Shown in pieces: positions 38 through 12,000 of a stretch of 64,000 bases of DNA. Source of the DNA: Oculina patagonica (taxonomy: Eukaryota); the NCBI RefSeq assembly GCF_052425735.1, contig NC_135770.1, positions 682,001 to 746,000 of the forward strand, written 5' to 3'. Each line of letters begins with the position of its first letter. Positions within the stretch are counted from its first letter, which is position 1. Made by a program: the position numbers and the translations under genes. Under the pieces are notes generated by a model. The model saw only the letters and a list, made by a program, of their open reading frames with translations. It did not search any database and was not told the DNA's origin.

Positions 38-3000
38 GTAAACATGATTGGTTCAGCGATACAAGACCTTCAGCTTTTTATTGGGTTCCAGCGTATATCG
101 CACGTTCTAATTGAATGCGCTATTTACATGCATTTCCTACTGCAAAGGGTTCTGATGTCTTTTAGATGTTATTAGCTATAGCGGTAACGCAGTCTGCTTC
201 CTTGCCCTTATTTGGGTTAGTAACGCAAGTGTTGGTGACGCCTCAGATAAGGGCTTCAAAGAAGGAAAGATAGCAAATCGGTTATATCTGCGACTTGAAT
301 ATTTGTAAATATTAATGTCAAGGGCCGAGCTCTACTTTGTTTTCATGTCTTTTCTCTTGTCTAGACAATGGTTAAGATGGCCCCTCTGGGCGTAGCTGCT
401 CGGTCAGCGGCCTTCTCTCCTGACGGGGAATTGCTTGCAGTCGGTCTCAAAAATGGCGCCTTTGTTGTCCTAAAAACCGCTGACCTGAAGGTCGTGGCGC
501 AGAAACGCGATCGTCACCAGGCTATTCAGGATGTCAGGTAAACAAGTCAATAATGCTGTTCTGTTATACCTGTTTTGAAACTGTTTCTTCGTAATTGGAA
601 AGAAACGCGCGGATTAATCATGAAGCTTAAAATCTGAATATAGATTTGATTTTTGTCTCCGCAAGCTGCAGGGTTGTCTTGCCCCATCCACTACTGGCAC
701 AGAAAGATTGAACTTTTTTTGGGAAAATCCAAATCCGGATTCTTGAATCCAAAAACGCCGGATTTTGCGTTTTATACTTTAATCCGGAAATGGAATATGA
801 ATCCCAGAATCCACACAAAACTGGATTTGTTAGATTAAACCTAAATCCGGATTTTTAAGATTCATGATCCGTGCGTTTCTTTAGGAAAAGATTAAGAAAA
901 ATCCATTTACCCAGCGTCTTAAAAACGGTCTTTTAAATGCGAGTGAATGAATAAAATTTGGGATAACTAACTAACTCGTTTCTGTTCGTCAACATCAAAC
1001 GATTCATCTTATGAAATGCGTGGTTTTTTTTTTTTGATTCACTGTTTTTGAGCCGACCAATTAGTTTCTTGGTACTGCAGATGGCTCGATGTTTCCCCAA
1101 TGTTTCCCAGTTTTGTCAACTAGGAAACTAGAAAACATTGTTGCAGCTGAAACATTGGGCGCTTTCCATTCGACCAAAAACTCTGAGTTTGAGTTTCCGG
1201 AAAATTCCAGTGGCAAATGGAACAGCATTTTCCAACTTTTCCGGTTGACTGCACGGAAGGCAAAACAAAATTCGCATATGGTCAGGTACTGCTAATATGG
1301 AAATTTCTACGCTACATTAAAATAATGCACTGTTGCCGGTTTCCTGCACATATAACTCGATGTTTTTGCAAATAAAAAGCATTCCGAGCACTGAAAATAA
1401 ATGCCATGAATGACATCGTGGCTACAAATACAGGCACCTTTCAAAAGGCACACCACAAGCAACGAAAACGTCGCCAACCCAAAAAGTTTAATGAGCAAAA
1501 CAATGGCGTAGCCTGCACGCGCGTTATAAATATTTGTACATTTCTTTGCTGCCGCCTGCAAAACAACAACAAAAAACAACCGAGTTCACCAAAATGTTTT
1601 ATTTGCAGTTTCAAGAATGCTTCCTTAACACATGTACCTGCTTTCAGCTGCACAAATCGCTAAATTCTCTGCCGAAGGAACTCAGGCTAAGTGTAAAATG
1701 GTAGCTTTTTCCAAAATTTCCGGAAAAGAGGACAACCTCGCAAGGTAGACCCAAATTTTCGAAAACAATTTCCGGGAACTTTCAGTTCCATTTGATTTTG
1801 CTTCTGGAATTTCCGGGGTTTTCGGTTGAATGGTTTGCATTTCGGAAAGTCGACACTTTCCGGATTTTCTGGAAACTTTCCAGCAAATTTCTGTACCATT
1901 CGTCCTTGTTCCGAAATTTCCGGAATTTTTGGTCGAATGGACAGCGCCCATTGTTTCTTGTCATGTTTCTGCCAAAACGAGGAAAACCTCACAGAGCGCT
2001 CATGTTTCCCCAGTGTTTCCCAGTTTTGCGACACGGGAAGCGTTGTTTCAAGCGTCAATTTATGTTTCCAAGAAGCAAAATTTGCTTCTGCTACACGGCA
2101 GAAACATTCCGTGTTTTTTTGTGGCATTGAACCATGGCAAGACGAGGAAACAATTAAGGCCTAGCTAAACTAGAAAACAATGTTGCAGAAACACTGTTCC
2201 TTGTTATGTTTCGTAGGTTCCTGAATTGGCGGAAAGCAAGGAAAATGTTTTGCTACCCGTGCCACGCATTTGCATAAACCTTTTTAACATTGCTTCCAAG
2301 GTTGGTAAACCGGACAACATATGTTTCTCCATAGCAAAATTTGTGTCCGGGTAACAAAAATGTTTCTGACCTGAGGCAAAAACATTTTTTCGTTTCCAAG
2401 AAGCAAGATTTGTTTCCGCAACATGTTTCCCGCGCGGCTAAACTATTAAACATTTTTTACTTCCTATCCTATTCAAACTAAAATTAGCTTATGAAAACAA
2501 GGTGTCCCTGAATGAGTGAACTTGACGAACCCTGGGATAATCACCATAAAAGGACAGCTTTCTCTTTTGTGATCTTAGAATATATAAAATAAGAGAAATA
2601 ATCAAATGTGAAAATCATTTTGAGCGACAGCAAGAGCAAAAAGACGCATTTTTCTTTCACGCAAGAACCAACCTCGCCATGGCTGCTTGGGAAACTGTTT
2701 TCTTCACTGTCTTCAACTGCTTGTCGTTAGTTATTGGTAGTTGTGCTAATCTCTTGGTGGTTATTTCGTCCCTGATGTTTGTCTCCGTTCAAGATATAGA
2801 AGCGACTAGTTTGTTCCTGGTTAGTTTATCTGTTGCTGATTTCCTTCTCTGTGCAGTTTACCAACCGTTGCTGGTTATTCGCTTCAACCACCTTGACCAA
2901 AACCTGTCTTACCGGCTAAGCATGCTGTTCTTTGGTAATAGTTTAATGACGGCATCGTTGAATGGATTATTGGCTGTGAACTTCGATCGGTTTGTTGCCA

Positions 3001-9000: not shown

Positions 9001-12000
9001 GGTTGCCACAGGTCAGGAAATGGTCAGGGAAAAATAAAATTCTTCGCGGTCAGGGAAAAATCAGGGAATTTTATTTTGAGTCAGGGAAAATTGACATTTT
9101 GAAGAAAAGTCAGGAAAAATTAGAATATAACACCACTGATTTTATACAATTGATGGCTGGAAGAAACATTTCAGGTCAAAGTGATCTCAGCGATGTTTTT
9201 TTTTCTTGGAAGTGGGGGCTTGAGGCCGCTACTATATCTGACATTTTGAATTTATTTGGGCAGGGAAATGTTATTTTTATCAGGGAAAAGTCAGGAAATT
9301 TTGAAAGCTTATGTCCGTGGCTACCATGTTTAAGCGCAGGAAATTCGCTAACTCAGTTGACATATTTTCGCAGCCTCATAGAAGCAGTTGATAAGTTGAA
9401 GGTGAATTCTGGGATAGTTACATTTAAATGTGTACCACAAAAAAGTGACAGCTGCCGTCTTCGCTGTTCGAGAAATCTTCTCTTGGCTTAGAAAAATCAG
9501 AAAAAATGTGAAACATCCTTCGAATCGTTCGCTTGCTCGTTTGCTTGCCAAAGTGTGACCAAAAGAGTAAAAAATATGAATAATACGCANNNNNNNNNNN
9601 NNNNNNNNNNNNNNNNNNNNNNNNNNNNNNNNNNNNNNNNNNNNNNNNNNNNNNNNNNNNNNNNNNNNNNNNNNNNNNNNNNNNNNNNNNNNNNNNNNNN
9701 NNNNNNNNNNNNNNNNNNNNNNNNNNNNNNNNNNNNNNNNNNNNNNNNNNNNNNNNNNNNNNNNNNNNNNNNNNNNNGTAATAACACTGTCCTGCAAACA
9801 AATGCTTTAAAAATGAAAGCTTAACTGCTTGAAGTCGCAAATCCCCGATACGGGTTTTGTGATAAAGGATTGAAGAACTTTGTGCAGCAGTCATTTTGTT
9901 CCAGTGCGGATGAAGATTTTTTTTAACAGACTATTCGAATATTGGATCTTTATATTGCGGAATCAGTGTTCCATAAGGACGTCTAATCTTCGAGATGAGA
10001 GTGAACAGAGACTGGATGTTCTTATTTTATTTCATGAATTGTTCTTCTATAAGCCCAGGCTTACGTTCTAAGTGTATTCTTTAAATTTTGGTCGATCTCA
10101 GCCTCGACGTTCTCATAAACGTTTCTTATAATAATAAAGAAAGAGTGCATAAATAAACCGAATAATAGCGCTCAAAGCCCAGTTAAACTTCTCTTGACTG
10201 CGTTCAGCCCAGTTTAAGGATGGCGTCACTTGTTCGGTCCCAGGTCCCATATACTGCTAACAGACGTCTCCCACAAGCTAAAGTCGTTCCCAGGGTCTCC
10301 CTTCTTTGCGAGGTTGAATCACTGGTAGCCAGAAGAACAGTGGTGTTATCAACACGTACACCAGGGCTAACTCCCATTTTTGGCCCTTAGAAATGTATGG
10401 GGATAACAGAAATCCCTGGCTTACGTCGGTAATTAGGGCGCCTAATTTCGCCGAGTTTTAATTTCCGATTTCTGCGCAGCCGTCCTCGACACAACTACGC
10501 TGGGTTGCAAGTTTTAAGTCACGACGAGAACGTGGAGGAGTGTAATTATTTTATCATTATTTTTTTAAAAATTTGCAGTGGTCAGTACACTTAGCTATGA
10601 TAACAGTGCATCCCAACAGACAAACGAACAAAGTCTGCAGTGACACAACAGCCGGTTGGCAGGATGAGGTACAATACAAAATCAATACATTTCAACACAC
10701 AAACAGCGTTTTTATTGGATATTTCAGATTCAGTCCAGATGGTAAATACTTAGCAGTTGGATCTGACGACAGCTGTGTAGATTTCTATGAGCTTCGCGAT
10801 GGACGACCGCTGACACGTGTTGGGTACTGCAAGGGAATTCCCTCATTCGTCACTCAGATGGACTTTTCTGCTGATGGCAAGTTTATTCAAGTAAGCGAAA
10901 CCTCTAGGAATACATTTAGTCTGTTGTTATATATAGCTGAAAAAGTTAAGAAGGCTGAGTAAACAAATCTCCTTTTTCGCGCGCTCAATCCTCCCATTCT
11001 AACGACGTATCTCTTCAGAAATTCCTGTGCCATTGTCTGATTGGTTGTTGCTTGGTTACGAATTTTCGCGCGCAAGTAGCAACCAATCAGAAACACGGTA
11101 CACAAAGCTGTAGAGCTACGTCATTAGTATGGAATTTTCAGGTAAAAAATATCGGACGTCTTTCGAACAGAGCTCAAGAATTGAGTGCACAAAGTGAATC
11201 AAATCCGCGTTTAACATGTACACAAACATGTTAAACTTGAAATCAATTTGGTTTACTTTTTTATTCTTTAATGGTTGCCAACTTATTTTTTATTTATTGG
11301 TTAAGGTGTCTACAGGCGCTTATGAGCGCTTGGTTTTTACTGTTCCTGGTGGAAACCCTTTGAAGGACAGAAAAGAAATCAACAGAATCACGTGGGCCTC
11401 GTGGACTAGGTAAGTGGTTTTAGTCTCTAGCTTCTAGACTTTGGACTCGTCACGCAATCTTTCTTCCGGCATGATTGCGTGACGTGCCAGGATGGGCTCC
11501 TGGACGTGCACAACATGGACCGTTTGCGTAAGAGGCTATCATCAGATTATCTTAACTTCGTTTTATTTAATTTCAGTGGTTTTCCAAAGGGGAACGTACT
11601 TTTTAATCAGTTTTAATTTGCTGTGGACATTTCAGTGCTCTAGGTAATGAAGTGATTGGCGTGTGGCCGCGAAACGCTGACAAAGCTGACGTCAACTGCG
11701 CCAATCTTTCGTCCAGCGGTCTCTCGCTCGCCACTGGTGATGACTTTGGTTTTGTAAAGTTGTTCGAGTTCCCTGTCACGGAGAAATTTGTAAGTTTATT
11801 ATTCCTCAGTCTTGCTCCGTTGTTATGATAATAATAATGATAATGAATTTATATAGCGCATTTTTCATATGTATATGTTCAAATGCAGACCACAACACCG
11901 GGAGCTTCGTTCACTACTCTTTGCGAATAGTGTGTGGGTTCTTTAACGTCCCCTGTTATAAGACTGAAGATACAGGAGACGGGACCTACGGTTTATCGTC

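What the first reader, a model, noticed from the sequence alone, without database searches (positions are those of the whole stretch)
538..10727. Birth-and-death cluster of single-exon orphan GPCRs nested on the sense strand of an EML5/6 intron
Seen: the EML exons at 365-537 and 10728-10890 join in phase (...QDVR|FSPDG...), and the intron between them holds two intact GPCR ORFs, one pseudogene and one fragment, all on the EML strand. Known: nested genes are more often antisense to the host, and same-strand nesting puts GPCR poly(A) signals (AATAAA at 5486 and 8856) inside the host pre-mRNA. Inference: a local receptor array, possibly chemosensory, that has its own promoters or is co-regulated with or competes with EML transcription.
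Basis: partly seen in the sequence, partly recalled or inferred. Interest (0 to 1): 0.72.

Follow-up and report, generated by a model that had tools for sequence, protein, structure and literature searches.

The report
Receptor genes nested in EML intron
One intron of a stony-coral EML5/6-type gene is about 0.5 kb long in most related corals but here holds a 10-kb block copied from a receptor-gene array on the same chromosome (two readable receptor genes, one wrecked copy, scraps and transposons); this is a solid but fairly ordinary case of gene-family turnover, and nobody has yet shown the genes are expressed.

Summary
Exons 365-537 and 10728-10890 join in phase. They map to adjacent residues of EML1 and belong to a gene with three HELP motifs, which is the EML5/6 type. 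The 10,190-bp intron holds two intact class-A GPCR ORFs, A (2679-3626) and C (7459-8412).

The genome is Oculina patagonica. The block is a DNA-level copy of units from a seven-copy array 1.16 Mb away. The evidence is flank homology from about -870 to +1.8 kb around the coding sequence, and that array sits at the ancestral, syntenic site. Six other coral taxa have a 413-673-bp intron with no GPCR. Two taxa share the loaded intron. One is a distant coral from a Tara metagenome with intact sense-strand GPCRs.

Coding sequences cluster by species. So the nesting is either old with homogenisation between clusters, or it arose more than once.

C shows purifying selection, A is doubtful, and B evolves neutrally.

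The assembly gap lies in non-coding DNA, and its two sides are collinear in a paralogous unit and in the Tara contig.

Expression, promoter use and interference with EML remain untested: two shallow poly(A) runs gave no reads.

The parts
365..537 (+). EML5/6-type exon (WD40 blade of the third TAPE unit), ends in codon phase 2
   Evidence: Splice sites read directly. Translation. Maps to EML1 (4ci8) residues 427-472. Orthologous ORFs carry PF23414 Beta-prop_EML_2.
538..10727 (+). Expanded intron, 10,190 bp including 188 N; 413-673 bp in six other coral taxa
   Evidence: Searches give intron lengths of 511, 485, 541, 529, 673 and 413 bp with no GPCR.
714..920 (.). Old dispersed repeat, about 210 bp
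   Evidence: At least 326 candidate copies at 76-79% identity.
935..1090 (+). Distal upstream segment of unit A, homologous to 6453-6615 upstream of C
   Evidence: Self-BLAST 75% over 164 nt. The spacing matches once the MITE at 1149-1957 is removed.
1149..1957 (.). Young MITE-like transposon with 35-nt terminal inverted repeats
   Evidence: inverted repeats; at least 1398 candidate copies, 90-96% identical, full length.
2478..3597 (+). GPCR unit A: conserved proximal upstream block plus ORF 2679-3626 (315 aa). Its C-terminal tail and 3' flank are lost at the junction with B.
   Evidence: Branch pN/pS is 0.62, not significantly below 1. An independent contig spans the A/B junction (X1 record 2).
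3598..3612 (+). Filler of about 15 nt at the A/B deletion junction
   Evidence: Sequence comparison.
3613..5461 (+). Pseudogene B: starts in TM1/2 (lacks ~44 codons and the promoter), split by two transposons, with a frameshift and an in-frame stop
   Evidence: Branch pN/pS is 0.92 with 1 stop.
3787..4051 (+). tRNA-derived-SINE-like insertion in B, flanked by a 5-bp AACTT duplication
   Evidence: sequence; A/B-box-like motifs identified by eye; at least 2660 candidate full-length copies. Depth is ~2000 against ~5 for the flanks. ARAGORN finds no tRNA.
4347..5055 (.). MITE-like composite insertion in B with 31-nt terminal inverted repeats and a ~10-bp target duplication (CACCACCTGA)
   Evidence: Depth is ~76 against ~5 for the flanks.
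6289..6383 (+). 95-bp remnant of a fourth GPCR unit (TM2-TM3 region)
   Evidence: 89% identity to A 2854-2948. tblastn E 5e-9.
6453..7458 (+). Upstream region of unit C, homologous to upstream regions of main-array paralogs and of the Tara coral's unit 2
   Evidence: window 6587-8524 against L003. (L043 3716-5517 against window 6563-8424). Conserved proximal block.
7459..8412 (+). GPCR C: intact 317-aa class-A receptor ORF with DRF, CWLP and NPFIY motifs
   Evidence: Branch pN/pS is 0.46, P=0.017.
8413..8997 (+). 3' flank of unit C, shared with main-array units; ATTAAA at 8689 and AATAAA at 8856
8998..9330 (.). Dispersed ~330-bp repeat inserted in C's downstream flank. The 186-aa ORF 8931-9491 overlaps it and has no Pfam hit.
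   Evidence: at least 744 candidates, 82-92% identity..
9590..9777 (.). Assembly gap (N) in non-coding DNA
   Evidence: The flanks are collinear in L004 and L043.
9952..10272 (+). Array-derived downstream flank (matches the flank of paralog p1911)
   Evidence: 68% over 349 nt, collinear with window 8795-8997.
10316..10355 (-). Antisense GPCR remnant (matches C 8083-8122)
   Evidence: 82.5% over 40 nt, E 1.5e-5. Longer antisense remnants lie at the same place in L033.
10728..10890 (+). Next EML exon; its first base completes the Arg codon
   Evidence: Maps to EML1 residues 474-527 at E 9e-12. PF23414 on orthologous ORFs.

Best explanation
**What it is (shown).** A segment of a tandem array of intronless class-A GPCR genes lies at 1.846-1.925 Mb on chromosome C13 of Oculina patagonica. 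Part of that array was copied as DNA into a formerly ~0.5-kb intron in the third TAPE unit of the EML5/6-type gene, 1.16 Mb away. The copy carried about 0.9 kb of upstream sequence and more than 0.6 kb of downstream flank.

**What happened inside the intron (shown).** The block evolved by birth and death:
- tandem duplication into at least four sense-strand units;
- deletions that fused A to a promoterless B and reduced a fourth unit to 95 bp;
- at least five transposon insertions.

Together these inflated the intron about 20-fold.

**Function (inferred).**
- C is most likely a working orphan receptor. It would be transcribed from its own family-type promoter and polyadenylated near ATTAAA 8689 or AATAAA 8856, independently of EML.
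- A is intact but weakly constrained and has lost its own 3' end.
- B is dead.
- The host still splices 537 to 10728. Its flanking exons remain 100% identical in protein to those of relatives.

**Age.** The same intron carries sense-strand GPCRs in a close relative (L033) and in a distant coral from a Tara metagenome. I favour one older colonisation followed by exchange or homogenisation with the main array (about 0.55) over independent colonisations (about 0.3).
For: **Structure**
- Anatomy of the copies.
- Host gene: three HELP motifs on the + strand at C13:655373, 668105 and 676079. The two exons map to EML1 residues 427-472 and 474-527, with the split Arg codon as residue 473.

**Genome-wide picture**
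- There are nine close copies (79-86% aa): three in the intron and seven in the second array. The next paralogs are only ~31% identical.
- The nucleotide tree splits {A,B,C} from the seven main-array copies with support 99/97.

**Copied as DNA**
- Window 6587-8524, 8534-8997 and 9952-10272 are collinear with the flanks of main-array units.
- No poly(A) tail is present.

**The main array is the ancestral site**
- The VWA neighbour of a relative's GPCR cluster (L031) maps at 84% identity to C13:1858870, inside the main array.
- L031 and L032 have no EML exons nearby.

**A short intron is ancestral**
- Introns of 511, 485, 541, 529, 673 and 413 bp, without GPCRs, occur in L034, L035/36, L037-39, L040, L041/44 and L042.
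- These loci have the same downstream polycystin gene.
- Their EML dS to O. patagonica ranges from 0.5 to above 1.3.

**The loaded intron is shared**
- L043 has exon 1 followed by two intact sense-strand GPCRs, and about 115 nt of alignable 5' intron.
- L049, from the same sample, links to L033 and to window 10142-10261.
- L033 shares window 10142-10727.

**Selection**
- A versus C: dN/dS 0.45, dS 0.22.
- Branch pN/pS: C 0.46 (P=0.017), A 0.62 (not significant), B 0.92 with a stop.

**Promoter inference**
- A conserved ~200-nt upstream block is present in all nine copies.

**Not an assembly artefact**
- Independent contigs span the A/B junction and the B/SINE junction.
- L048 matches window 1-1067 at 99%.
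Against: - No transcript evidence exists for A or C. No recorded RNA run holds the stretch. Two poly(A) runs of ~3.4 M reads each put no read on the genes. That is weak negative evidence, because depth was shallow and the tissue is unknown.
- A's intact ORF could be chance. About 43 lineage-specific substitutions would leave roughly a 1-in-7 chance of no stop (my estimate).
- Coding sequences cluster by species. An AU test rejects a joint clade of the O. patagonica and Tara intron copies (p=0.012).
- Intron-versus-main dS (0.235) is below the O. patagonica-Tara species dS (~0.42-0.53). A single old insertion therefore needs inter-cluster conversion.
- My permutation test gives only nominal signals for such conversion: p1846-C p=0.004, p1868-B p=0.014, neither significant after correction.
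- The insertion breakpoints could not be located.
Confidence: 0.8

Rival explanations
1. The same intron was colonised independently by the receptor array in the O. patagonica lineage (with L033) and in the Tara-coral lineage. On this view the intron is a recurrent landing site rather than an old shared insertion.
For: - Coding sequences group by species, and the AU test rejects a joint intron clade (p=0.012).
- Intron-versus-main dS of 0.235 is well below the species dS of ~0.42-0.53.
- L042, whose GPCRs are nearest to those of O. patagonica (dS 0.34-0.36), has a 413-bp empty intron.
- Unit order and upstream regions differ between the two species.
Against: - Two hits on the same intron and the same strand within a 529-Mb genome are improbable without a mechanism.
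- The first ~115 nt of the intron are alignable only between O. patagonica and the Tara coral.
- The 3' end is linked through L049 and L033.
- Tara copies are as old among themselves (dS 0.44) as the species split.
- Gene conversion is demonstrable within the main array (p=0.0002).
Confidence: 0.3
2. All intronic copies are non-functional relics. A and C are merely not yet broken, and nothing is transcribed except as part of the EML pre-mRNA.
For: - No RNA evidence was found.
- A's branch pN/pS of 0.62 is not significantly below 1, and A has lost its tail and 3' flank.
- B shows that copies here do decay.
Against: - C's branch shows an excess of synonymous change (pN/pS 0.46, P=0.017).
- C keeps all class-A motifs, the family's upstream block and a hexamer at the family's usual distance.
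- The Tara coral keeps at least three intact sense-strand ORFs in the same intron despite dS of 0.44 among them.
Confidence: 0.2
3. The receptors have no promoter of their own. They are expressed from the EML promoter by alternative splicing or polyadenylation, giving host-driven co-regulation or premature termination of EML.
For: - The copies are in sense orientation.
- The intron's sense strand has 26 poly(A) hexamers.
- The A/B filler reads like a splice acceptor, TTTATTTTACAG.
- Nested genes can cause premature host polyadenylation in mammals (PMC11694760).
Against: - The conserved family upstream block is kept in A and C, as in the non-nested paralogs.
- No poly(A)-run reads lie at 5486-5520 or 8689-8899.
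- The host's flanking exons stay under strong constraint, with dN of 0 against three taxa.
Confidence: 0.1
4. The block arrived by retroposition of a GPCR mRNA, or by capture inside a transposon, rather than by segmental DNA duplication.
For: - The genes are intronless, so a retrocopy would look similar.
- The intron is full of SINEs and MITEs.
Against: - Homology with main-array units extends about 870 nt upstream and up to ~1.8 kb downstream of the coding sequence, and includes antisense GPCR debris. That is far beyond any one mRNA.
- There is no poly(A) tract after the units.
- No terminal repeats bracket the whole block. I looked only by BLAST and the inverted-repeat scan of parts of it.
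Confidence: 0.07
5. Assembly artefact: the gap joins unrelated contigs, or the copies are collapsed or duplicated haplotypes.
For: - A 188-N gap sits in the intron.
Against: - Exon phase and adjacency are exact.
- The flanks are collinear in paralog L004 and in the contiguous foreign contig L043.
- The copies differ by 11-13%, against 1-3% between individuals.
- Independent contigs confirm the internal junctions, and L048 confirms the exon 1 side.
Confidence: 0.03

Closest known systems
Host/nested gene pairs in animal genomes (catalogued for mouse and human in PMC11694760)
   Same: Complete protein-coding genes lie inside an intron of a larger gene. Nested genes sit in unusually long introns. 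Interference with host polyadenylation is a possibility.
   Different: Here a whole tandem cluster is nested, not one gene. It can be dated against relatives whose intron is ~0.5 kb. It lies in a 3' rather than a 5' intron. No expression data exist. Same-strand orientation is not unusual, since that paper reports only a slight bias to opposite orientation.
Lineage-specific tandem expansions of intronless class-A GPCRs proposed as chemoreceptors (Lophotrochozoa PMC11886862; crown-of-thorns starfish PMC5442662)
   Same: The genes are single-exon rhodopsin-type receptors in tandem clusters. Clades are species-specific, selection is relaxed but purifying (dN/dS 0.3-0.6), and pseudogenes are present.
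   Different: The subfamily is small, with nine copies. No expression or ligand data exist. The titles and abstracts of these papers were seen but the papers were not read in full.
Adenosine A2A, cannabinoid CB2, alpha-1 adrenergic and TAAR receptors (nearest solved structures)
   Same: Class-A fold and motifs. The best PDB hit is A2A at E 6.5e-16. NCBI's automatic names for the paralogs are of this kind.
   Different: The similarity is only generic. The receptors here have a very short N-terminus and a short second extracellular loop, no Cys at the usual TM3/ECL2 positions, and DRF instead of DRY. No orthology to any ligand-defined receptor was shown.
Human GPCR clusters or genes inside host introns, such as the P2RY12/13/14-GPR87-GPR171 group within MED12L, or OMG/EVI2A/EVI2B in an NF1 intron (recalled from memory, not checked here)
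   Same: Intronless genes, partly a cluster of related receptors, sit inside an intron of an unrelated large gene.
   Different: As I recall, those nested genes are mostly antisense to their hosts and conserved across mammals. Here the copies are sense-oriented, and the arrangement has a patchy distribution among corals.

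Membership tests
Class-A (rhodopsin-type) GPCR, Pfam PF00001 7tm_1 | Profile match above the curated cut-off | tested here: met
   A scores 92.5 bits and C 98.4 bits against a cut-off of 30.5.
Class-A (rhodopsin-type) GPCR, Pfam PF00001 7tm_1 | Seven hydrophobic segments with E/DRY-type, CWxP and NPxxY motifs | tested here: met
   C has seven segments, with DRF at 103, CWLP at 216 and NPFIY at 254. A has the same motifs; at my hydropathy threshold its TM3 and TM7 are weaker, but they are homologous.
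Class-A (rhodopsin-type) GPCR, Pfam PF00001 7tm_1 | TM3-ECL2 disulfide (typical of the family, not defining) | tested here: not met
   There is no Cys between residues 59 and 215 in A or C. To my knowledge several class-A groups lack this bond, so this does not exclude membership.
EML5/EML6-type EMAP-like protein (host gene) | Three tandem HELP-plus-propeller (TAPE) units in one gene | tested here: met
   Three HELP hits above cut-off lie on the + strand at C13:655373, 668105 and 676079, upstream of the window. Other HELP hits are on other chromosomes.
EML5/EML6-type EMAP-like protein (host gene) | The flanking exons encode an EML-type beta-propeller and are consecutive | tested here: met
   PF23414 Beta-prop_EML_2 hits orthologous exon ORFs. 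The exons map to EML1 residues 427-472 and 474-527.
Nested gene (host/nested pair) | The nested gene lies wholly within one host intron | tested here: met
   The exons are consecutive in all relatives examined.
Nested gene (host/nested pair) | Both host and nested gene are transcribed as separate units | tested here: inconclusive
   No recorded RNA holder was found. Two poly(A) runs gave no reads on the genes. The EML exons were outside the stretch laid.
Birth-and-death multigene family | Recent duplicates together with pseudogenes and deletion remnants at the same locus | tested here: met
   {A,B,C} form one side of a branch (99/97). B evolves neutrally and is broken. Remnants lie at 6289-6383 and 10316-10355.
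Concerted evolution by gene conversion between the two clusters | Significant shared tracts between intron copies and main-array copies | tested here: inconclusive
   Only nominal signals: p1846-C p=0.004-0.036, p1868-B p=0.014. Neither is significant after correction. Within the main array, p1868-p1876 is significant at p=0.0002.
Processed retrocopy | Homology confined to the mRNA, with a poly(A) tail and target duplications | tested here: not met
   Homology extends about 870 nt upstream and more than 0.6 kb downstream. There is no poly(A) tract.
Chemosensory receptor | Expression in sensory cells, or a ligand response | not testable with these tools
   Only indirect signs exist: species-specific clades and dN/dS of 0.3-0.6.

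The most novel reading that the evidence does not exclude
This EML5/6 intron is a long-lived, or repeatedly used, home for this receptor family. Sense-strand clusters with intact ORFs persist in coral lineages separated by dS of about 0.5. Their coding sequences are kept similar to the main array 1.16 Mb away by inter-cluster exchange. The nesting is retained because the receptors benefit from, or are tied to, the host gene's chromatin or expression domain.
Probability: 0.2. Interest if true: 0.55.

Novelty: new member of a known kind. Interest (0 to 1): 0.33.

Why it matters
It is a clean, datable example of a gene array seeding a satellite cluster inside another gene's intron. A 0.4-0.7-kb intron in six coral taxa becomes 10 kb or more in three others, and the host's coding exons are untouched.

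If the receptors are expressed, the locus offers a natural test of how sense-strand nested genes, with their poly(A) signals, coexist with host splicing in a cnidarian. The patchy distribution and species-wise clustering make it a small test case for telling gene conversion apart from recurrent insertion.

For annotation it matters in three practical ways:
- A and C should be treated as members of one nine-gene orphan subfamily, not as 'adenosine', 'cannabinoid' or 'TAAR'-like receptors.
- B should be treated as a pseudogene.
- A is of doubtful status.

Tried and rejected
**RNA evidence.**
- The look-up of sequencing runs listed no holder recorded as RNA.
- Runs X1 and X2 were guessed to be RNA. 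When laid they gave patchy low-depth contigs over genic and intergenic DNA alike, so I read them as DNA. They say nothing about transcription.
- X23 and X24 (poly(A) raw reads) hit only the SINE.
- The single read-laying run could not also cover the EML exons, the 537/10728 junction or the gap.

**Searches and trees that gave nothing.**
- ARAGORN on the SINE-like insertions found no tRNA.
- The protein-only tree of the nine copies did not resolve A and C.
- Trees built from the flanks were unresolved.

**A flawed test.** My first conversion test was confounded by the non-homologous tails of p1923 and A. I redid it with those masked.

**Synteny dead ends.** L031 and L032, the loci of GPCR homologs in other corals, have no EML exons within 10 kb.

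**A conclusion I withdrew.** I first concluded that the insertion was specific to O. patagonica. I dropped this after L043 and L049 showed the same nesting in a distant coral.

**Not resolved.**
- The breakpoints of the inserted block: only 12 nt at the 5' end and 38 nt at the 3' end of the intron align with the short-intron species.
- The species identities of the ENA, Logan and Tara contigs.
- The species tree: only 336 nt of exon sequence is shared.

Haplotype duplication was rejected as an explanation for A versus C, because they differ by 11%.

Full report
**1. Observation**

The window is G000:C13:682001-746000 of a 529-Mb genome. Source names of paralogs on the same 38.3-Mb contig identify it as Oculina patagonica.

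Exon 365-537 is bounded by ag|ACA and AG|gtaaac and ends in codon phase 2. Exon 10728-10890 starts after ttcag with the base that completes AGA (Arg). The junction reads ..[20 protein letters not shown]...

Against the EML1 structure 4ci8, exon 1 residues 12-49 align to residues 427-464 and exon 2 residues 1-53 to 474-527. Extrapolating, the last exon 1 residue is 472, the split Arg is 473 and the first exon 2 residue is 474. No exon is missing between them.

Three HELP motifs above Pfam's cut-off lie upstream on the same strand, at C13:655373, 668105 and 676079. The only other HELP hits are on chromosomes C2, C6 and C12. The host is therefore the single three-TAPE, EML5/6-type gene.

**2. Contents of the intron (538-10727; 10,190 bp including 188 N)**

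ORF A (2679-3626, 315 aa) and ORF C (7459-8412, 317 aa) are rhodopsin-family receptors, with 7tm_1 E-values of 4e-26 and 6e-28. Both carry DRF, CWLP and NPFIY motifs, a very short N-terminus and no Cys at the usual TM3/ECL2 positions. The nearest solved structures are adenosine A2A, CB2, alpha-1 adrenergic receptors and TAARs, at a generic level only.

Self-comparison shows the following:
- A and C are 86.7% identical over 1.1 kb.
- B is one 5'-truncated copy in three pieces: 3613-3786, 4052-4345 and 5055-5461.
- B's first interruption (3787-4051) is a 265-bp tRNA-derived-SINE-like element with an AACTT target duplication. It has at least 2660 candidate copies genome-wide.
- B's second interruption (4347-5055) is a ~710-bp MITE-like element with 31-nt terminal inverted repeats and a ~10-bp duplication.
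- B also has a frameshift and a stop.
- B begins 15 nt after the point where A stops resembling its paralogs. A has therefore lost its last 12-15 codons and its 3' flank, and B has lost its promoter and first 44 codons.
- An independent contig spans this junction with one difference, so it is real.
- A 95-bp remnant of a fourth unit lies at 6289-6383.
- A 40-bp antisense remnant lies at 10316-10355.

The rest of the intron is transposons and unit flanks. The transposons are an old repeat at 714-920, a young MITE at 1149-1957 and a repeat at 8998-9330.

**3. The gap**

The gap 9590-9777 lies in non-coding DNA. The ORFs that cross it are artefacts of N. Both sides match, in order and orientation, two independent sequences:
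- the downstream flank of paralog p1911: window 8795-8997 and 9952-10272 against L004 819-618 and 470-143;
- one contiguous contig of another coral: window 8815-8954 and 9790-10019 against L043 6290-6436 and 6767-6976.

Together with the exon evidence and conserved exon order in relatives, the join is sound. I read no letters for the gap.

**4. Origin**

The genome has nine close copies of this subfamily (79-86% aa identity):
- A, B and C in the intron;
- seven at C13:1.846-1.925 Mb, on mixed strands; one of these is shortened and one is disrupted.

The next paralogs are only ~31% identical. A nucleotide tree separates {A,B,C} from the seven main-array copies (99/97).

Homology between unit C and main-array units runs from about 870 nt upstream of the ATG to about 1.8 kb downstream, interrupted by transposons. 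There is no poly(A) tract. The block was therefore copied as DNA and is not a retrocopy.

In a related coral (ERZ25067872) the family sits beside lectin and VWA genes (L031). The ortholog of that VWA gene (84% identity) lies inside the O. patagonica main array at C13:1858870. The main array is the ancestral site and the intron cluster is derived.

**5. Comparative state of the intron**

I used the exon-level ORFs that metagenome-style gene callers record to fetch orthologous loci.

The intron is short and holds no GPCR in six taxa:

| Locus | Intron length (bp) |
|---|---|
| L034 | 511 |
| L035/L036 | 485 |
| L037-39 | 541 |
| L040 | 529 |
| L041/L044 | 673 |
| L042 | 413 |

The large contigs among these have the same polycystin gene downstream on the minus strand. 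Their synonymous divergence from O. patagonica in the two exons ranges from ~0.5 to above 1.3. A short intron is therefore ancestral.

Three taxa have the loaded intron:
- O. patagonica. L048, an independent run, matches window 1-1067 at 99%.
- The L033 species (exon 2 dS 0.19). It shares window 10142-10727 and carries antisense GPCR debris there.
- An unidentified coral in a Tara metagenome (ERZ28654993).

In the Tara coral:
- In L043, exon 1 is 100% identical in protein (dS 0.53). It is followed on the same strand by two intact GPCRs.
- The first ~115 nt of intron align only between this coral and O. patagonica.
- L049, from the same sample, holds a further intact sense-strand unit and fragments in both orientations.
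- The 3' end of L049 matches L033 23-110, which corresponds to window 10142-10261.

**6. Age: an unresolved conflict**

Rooted on Orbicella, the coding sequences form species-wise clades (O. patagonica ten copies, support 92/91). An AU test rejects a joint clade of the O. patagonica and Tara intron copies (p=0.012).

Mean dS values:

| Comparison | dS |
|---|---|
| Intron vs main array, within O. patagonica | 0.235 |
| O. patagonica vs L031 | 0.34-0.36 |
| O. patagonica vs Tara | 0.42 |
| Among Tara copies | 0.44 |

Two readings remain:
- The intron was colonised once, before these lineages split, and O. patagonica intron copies have since exchanged sequence with the main array.
- The intron was colonised independently in each lineage.

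My Sawyer-type permutation test finds significant conversion within the main array (p1868-p1876, p=0.0002). Between the clusters it finds only nominal signals: p1846-C p=0.004-0.036, p1868-B p=0.014 (one search was confounded and is discarded). I favour the single old insertion with exchange at about 0.55 to 0.3. My reasons are the same intron, the same strand, the shared intron ends and the old Tara copies. The data do not settle it.

**7. Function**

Pairwise dN/dS in the subfamily is 0.3-0.6. For A versus C it is 0.45, with dS 0.22.

Parsimony counts on the terminal branches:

| Copy | Non-synonymous : synonymous | pN/pS | Note |
|---|---|---|---|
| C | 23:15 | 0.46 | P=0.017 for excess synonymous change |
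| A | 29:14 | 0.62 | P=0.10 |
| B | 37:12 | 0.92 | one stop |

C is under constraint, B is neutral and A is ambiguous.

A and C keep the ~200-nt upstream block that is conserved in all nine copies. It includes an AT-rich TATA-like stretch and the Kozak context CAACCTCGCCATGGC. C also has ATTAAA 276 nt after its stop, comparable to 224-271 nt in four main-array copies. I infer that C has its own promoter and terminator. This is not shown.

RNA evidence is lacking. No recorded RNA run holds the stretch, and two poly(A) runs of ~3.4 M reads each gave no reads on the genes. This is weak negative evidence.

**8. Comparison with known cases, and verdict**

Nested genes are common. In mouse and human the bias towards opposite orientation is only slight (PMC11694760). 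The sense copies here descend from one founder by tandem duplication, so their shared orientation counts as one event. Lineage-specific tandem expansions of intronless class-A receptors are well known in marine invertebrates (titles and abstracts).

This is a new, well-resolved member of known kinds. The mildly unusual parts are the 20-fold intron expansion by a transplanted array segment, and its patchy but shared presence in corals separated by dS of ~0.5. Interest is 0.33.

An earlier first-stage note on the same stretch (s1-294234) called these receptors minimal and disulfide-less. My cysteine check agrees with that.

Noticed in passing
window 17037-30273, minus strand: Large exons of a polycystin-1/REJ-like gene. 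Relatives' ORFs there carry PKD_channel, Polycystin_dom and PLAT. It lies tail-to-tail with the EML gene, and this neighbourhood is conserved in all relatives with long contigs.
   Followed up: partly
window 3787-4051 and genome-wide: A 265-bp tRNA-derived-SINE-like family with at least 2660 candidate full-length copies at 81-87% identity. Poly(A) RNA reads hit this element but run on into unlike sequence, so they come from other copies.
   Followed up: partly
window 1149-1957: An ~800-bp MITE-like family with 35-nt terminal inverted repeats. It has at least 1398 candidate copies at 90-96% identity, which suggests recent activity in this genome.
   Followed up: partly
window 6875-6929: A 55-bp stretch is skipped in contigs of two independent runs (X1, X2). 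This is probably an indel polymorphism in the spacer upstream of C.
   Followed up: no
G000:C13:1923088-1925096 (L009): Main-array copy p1923 reads only to residue ~279 and then runs into an Asn-rich stretch. Its last ~50 codons lie about 1 kb further on, so it is probably split by an insertion.
   Followed up: no
G000:C13:1868934-1869878 (L006): Main-array copy p1868 ends early at QMET (307 aa; a TGA inside the match), yet NCBI annotates it as a protein. It also shows a significant conversion tract with p1876.
   Followed up: partly
window 10891-11294: The next EML intron is also about 400 bp longer than in L034, so intron inflation in this gene is not confined to the GPCR-bearing intron.
   Followed up: no
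window 35013-35564 and 32979-33977: ORFs that look like retrotransposon integrase or tail fragments, beside two further assembly gaps at 38054-38202 and 38552-38683.
   Followed up: no
L049 1-2900 (Tara coral): The other coral's intron cluster holds GPCR pieces in both orientations: an antisense 5' part at 8-362, an antisense 80-nt piece at 2309-2388 and a sense 3' half at 2395-2895. Rearrangement there has been more extensive than in O. patagonica.
   Followed up: partly
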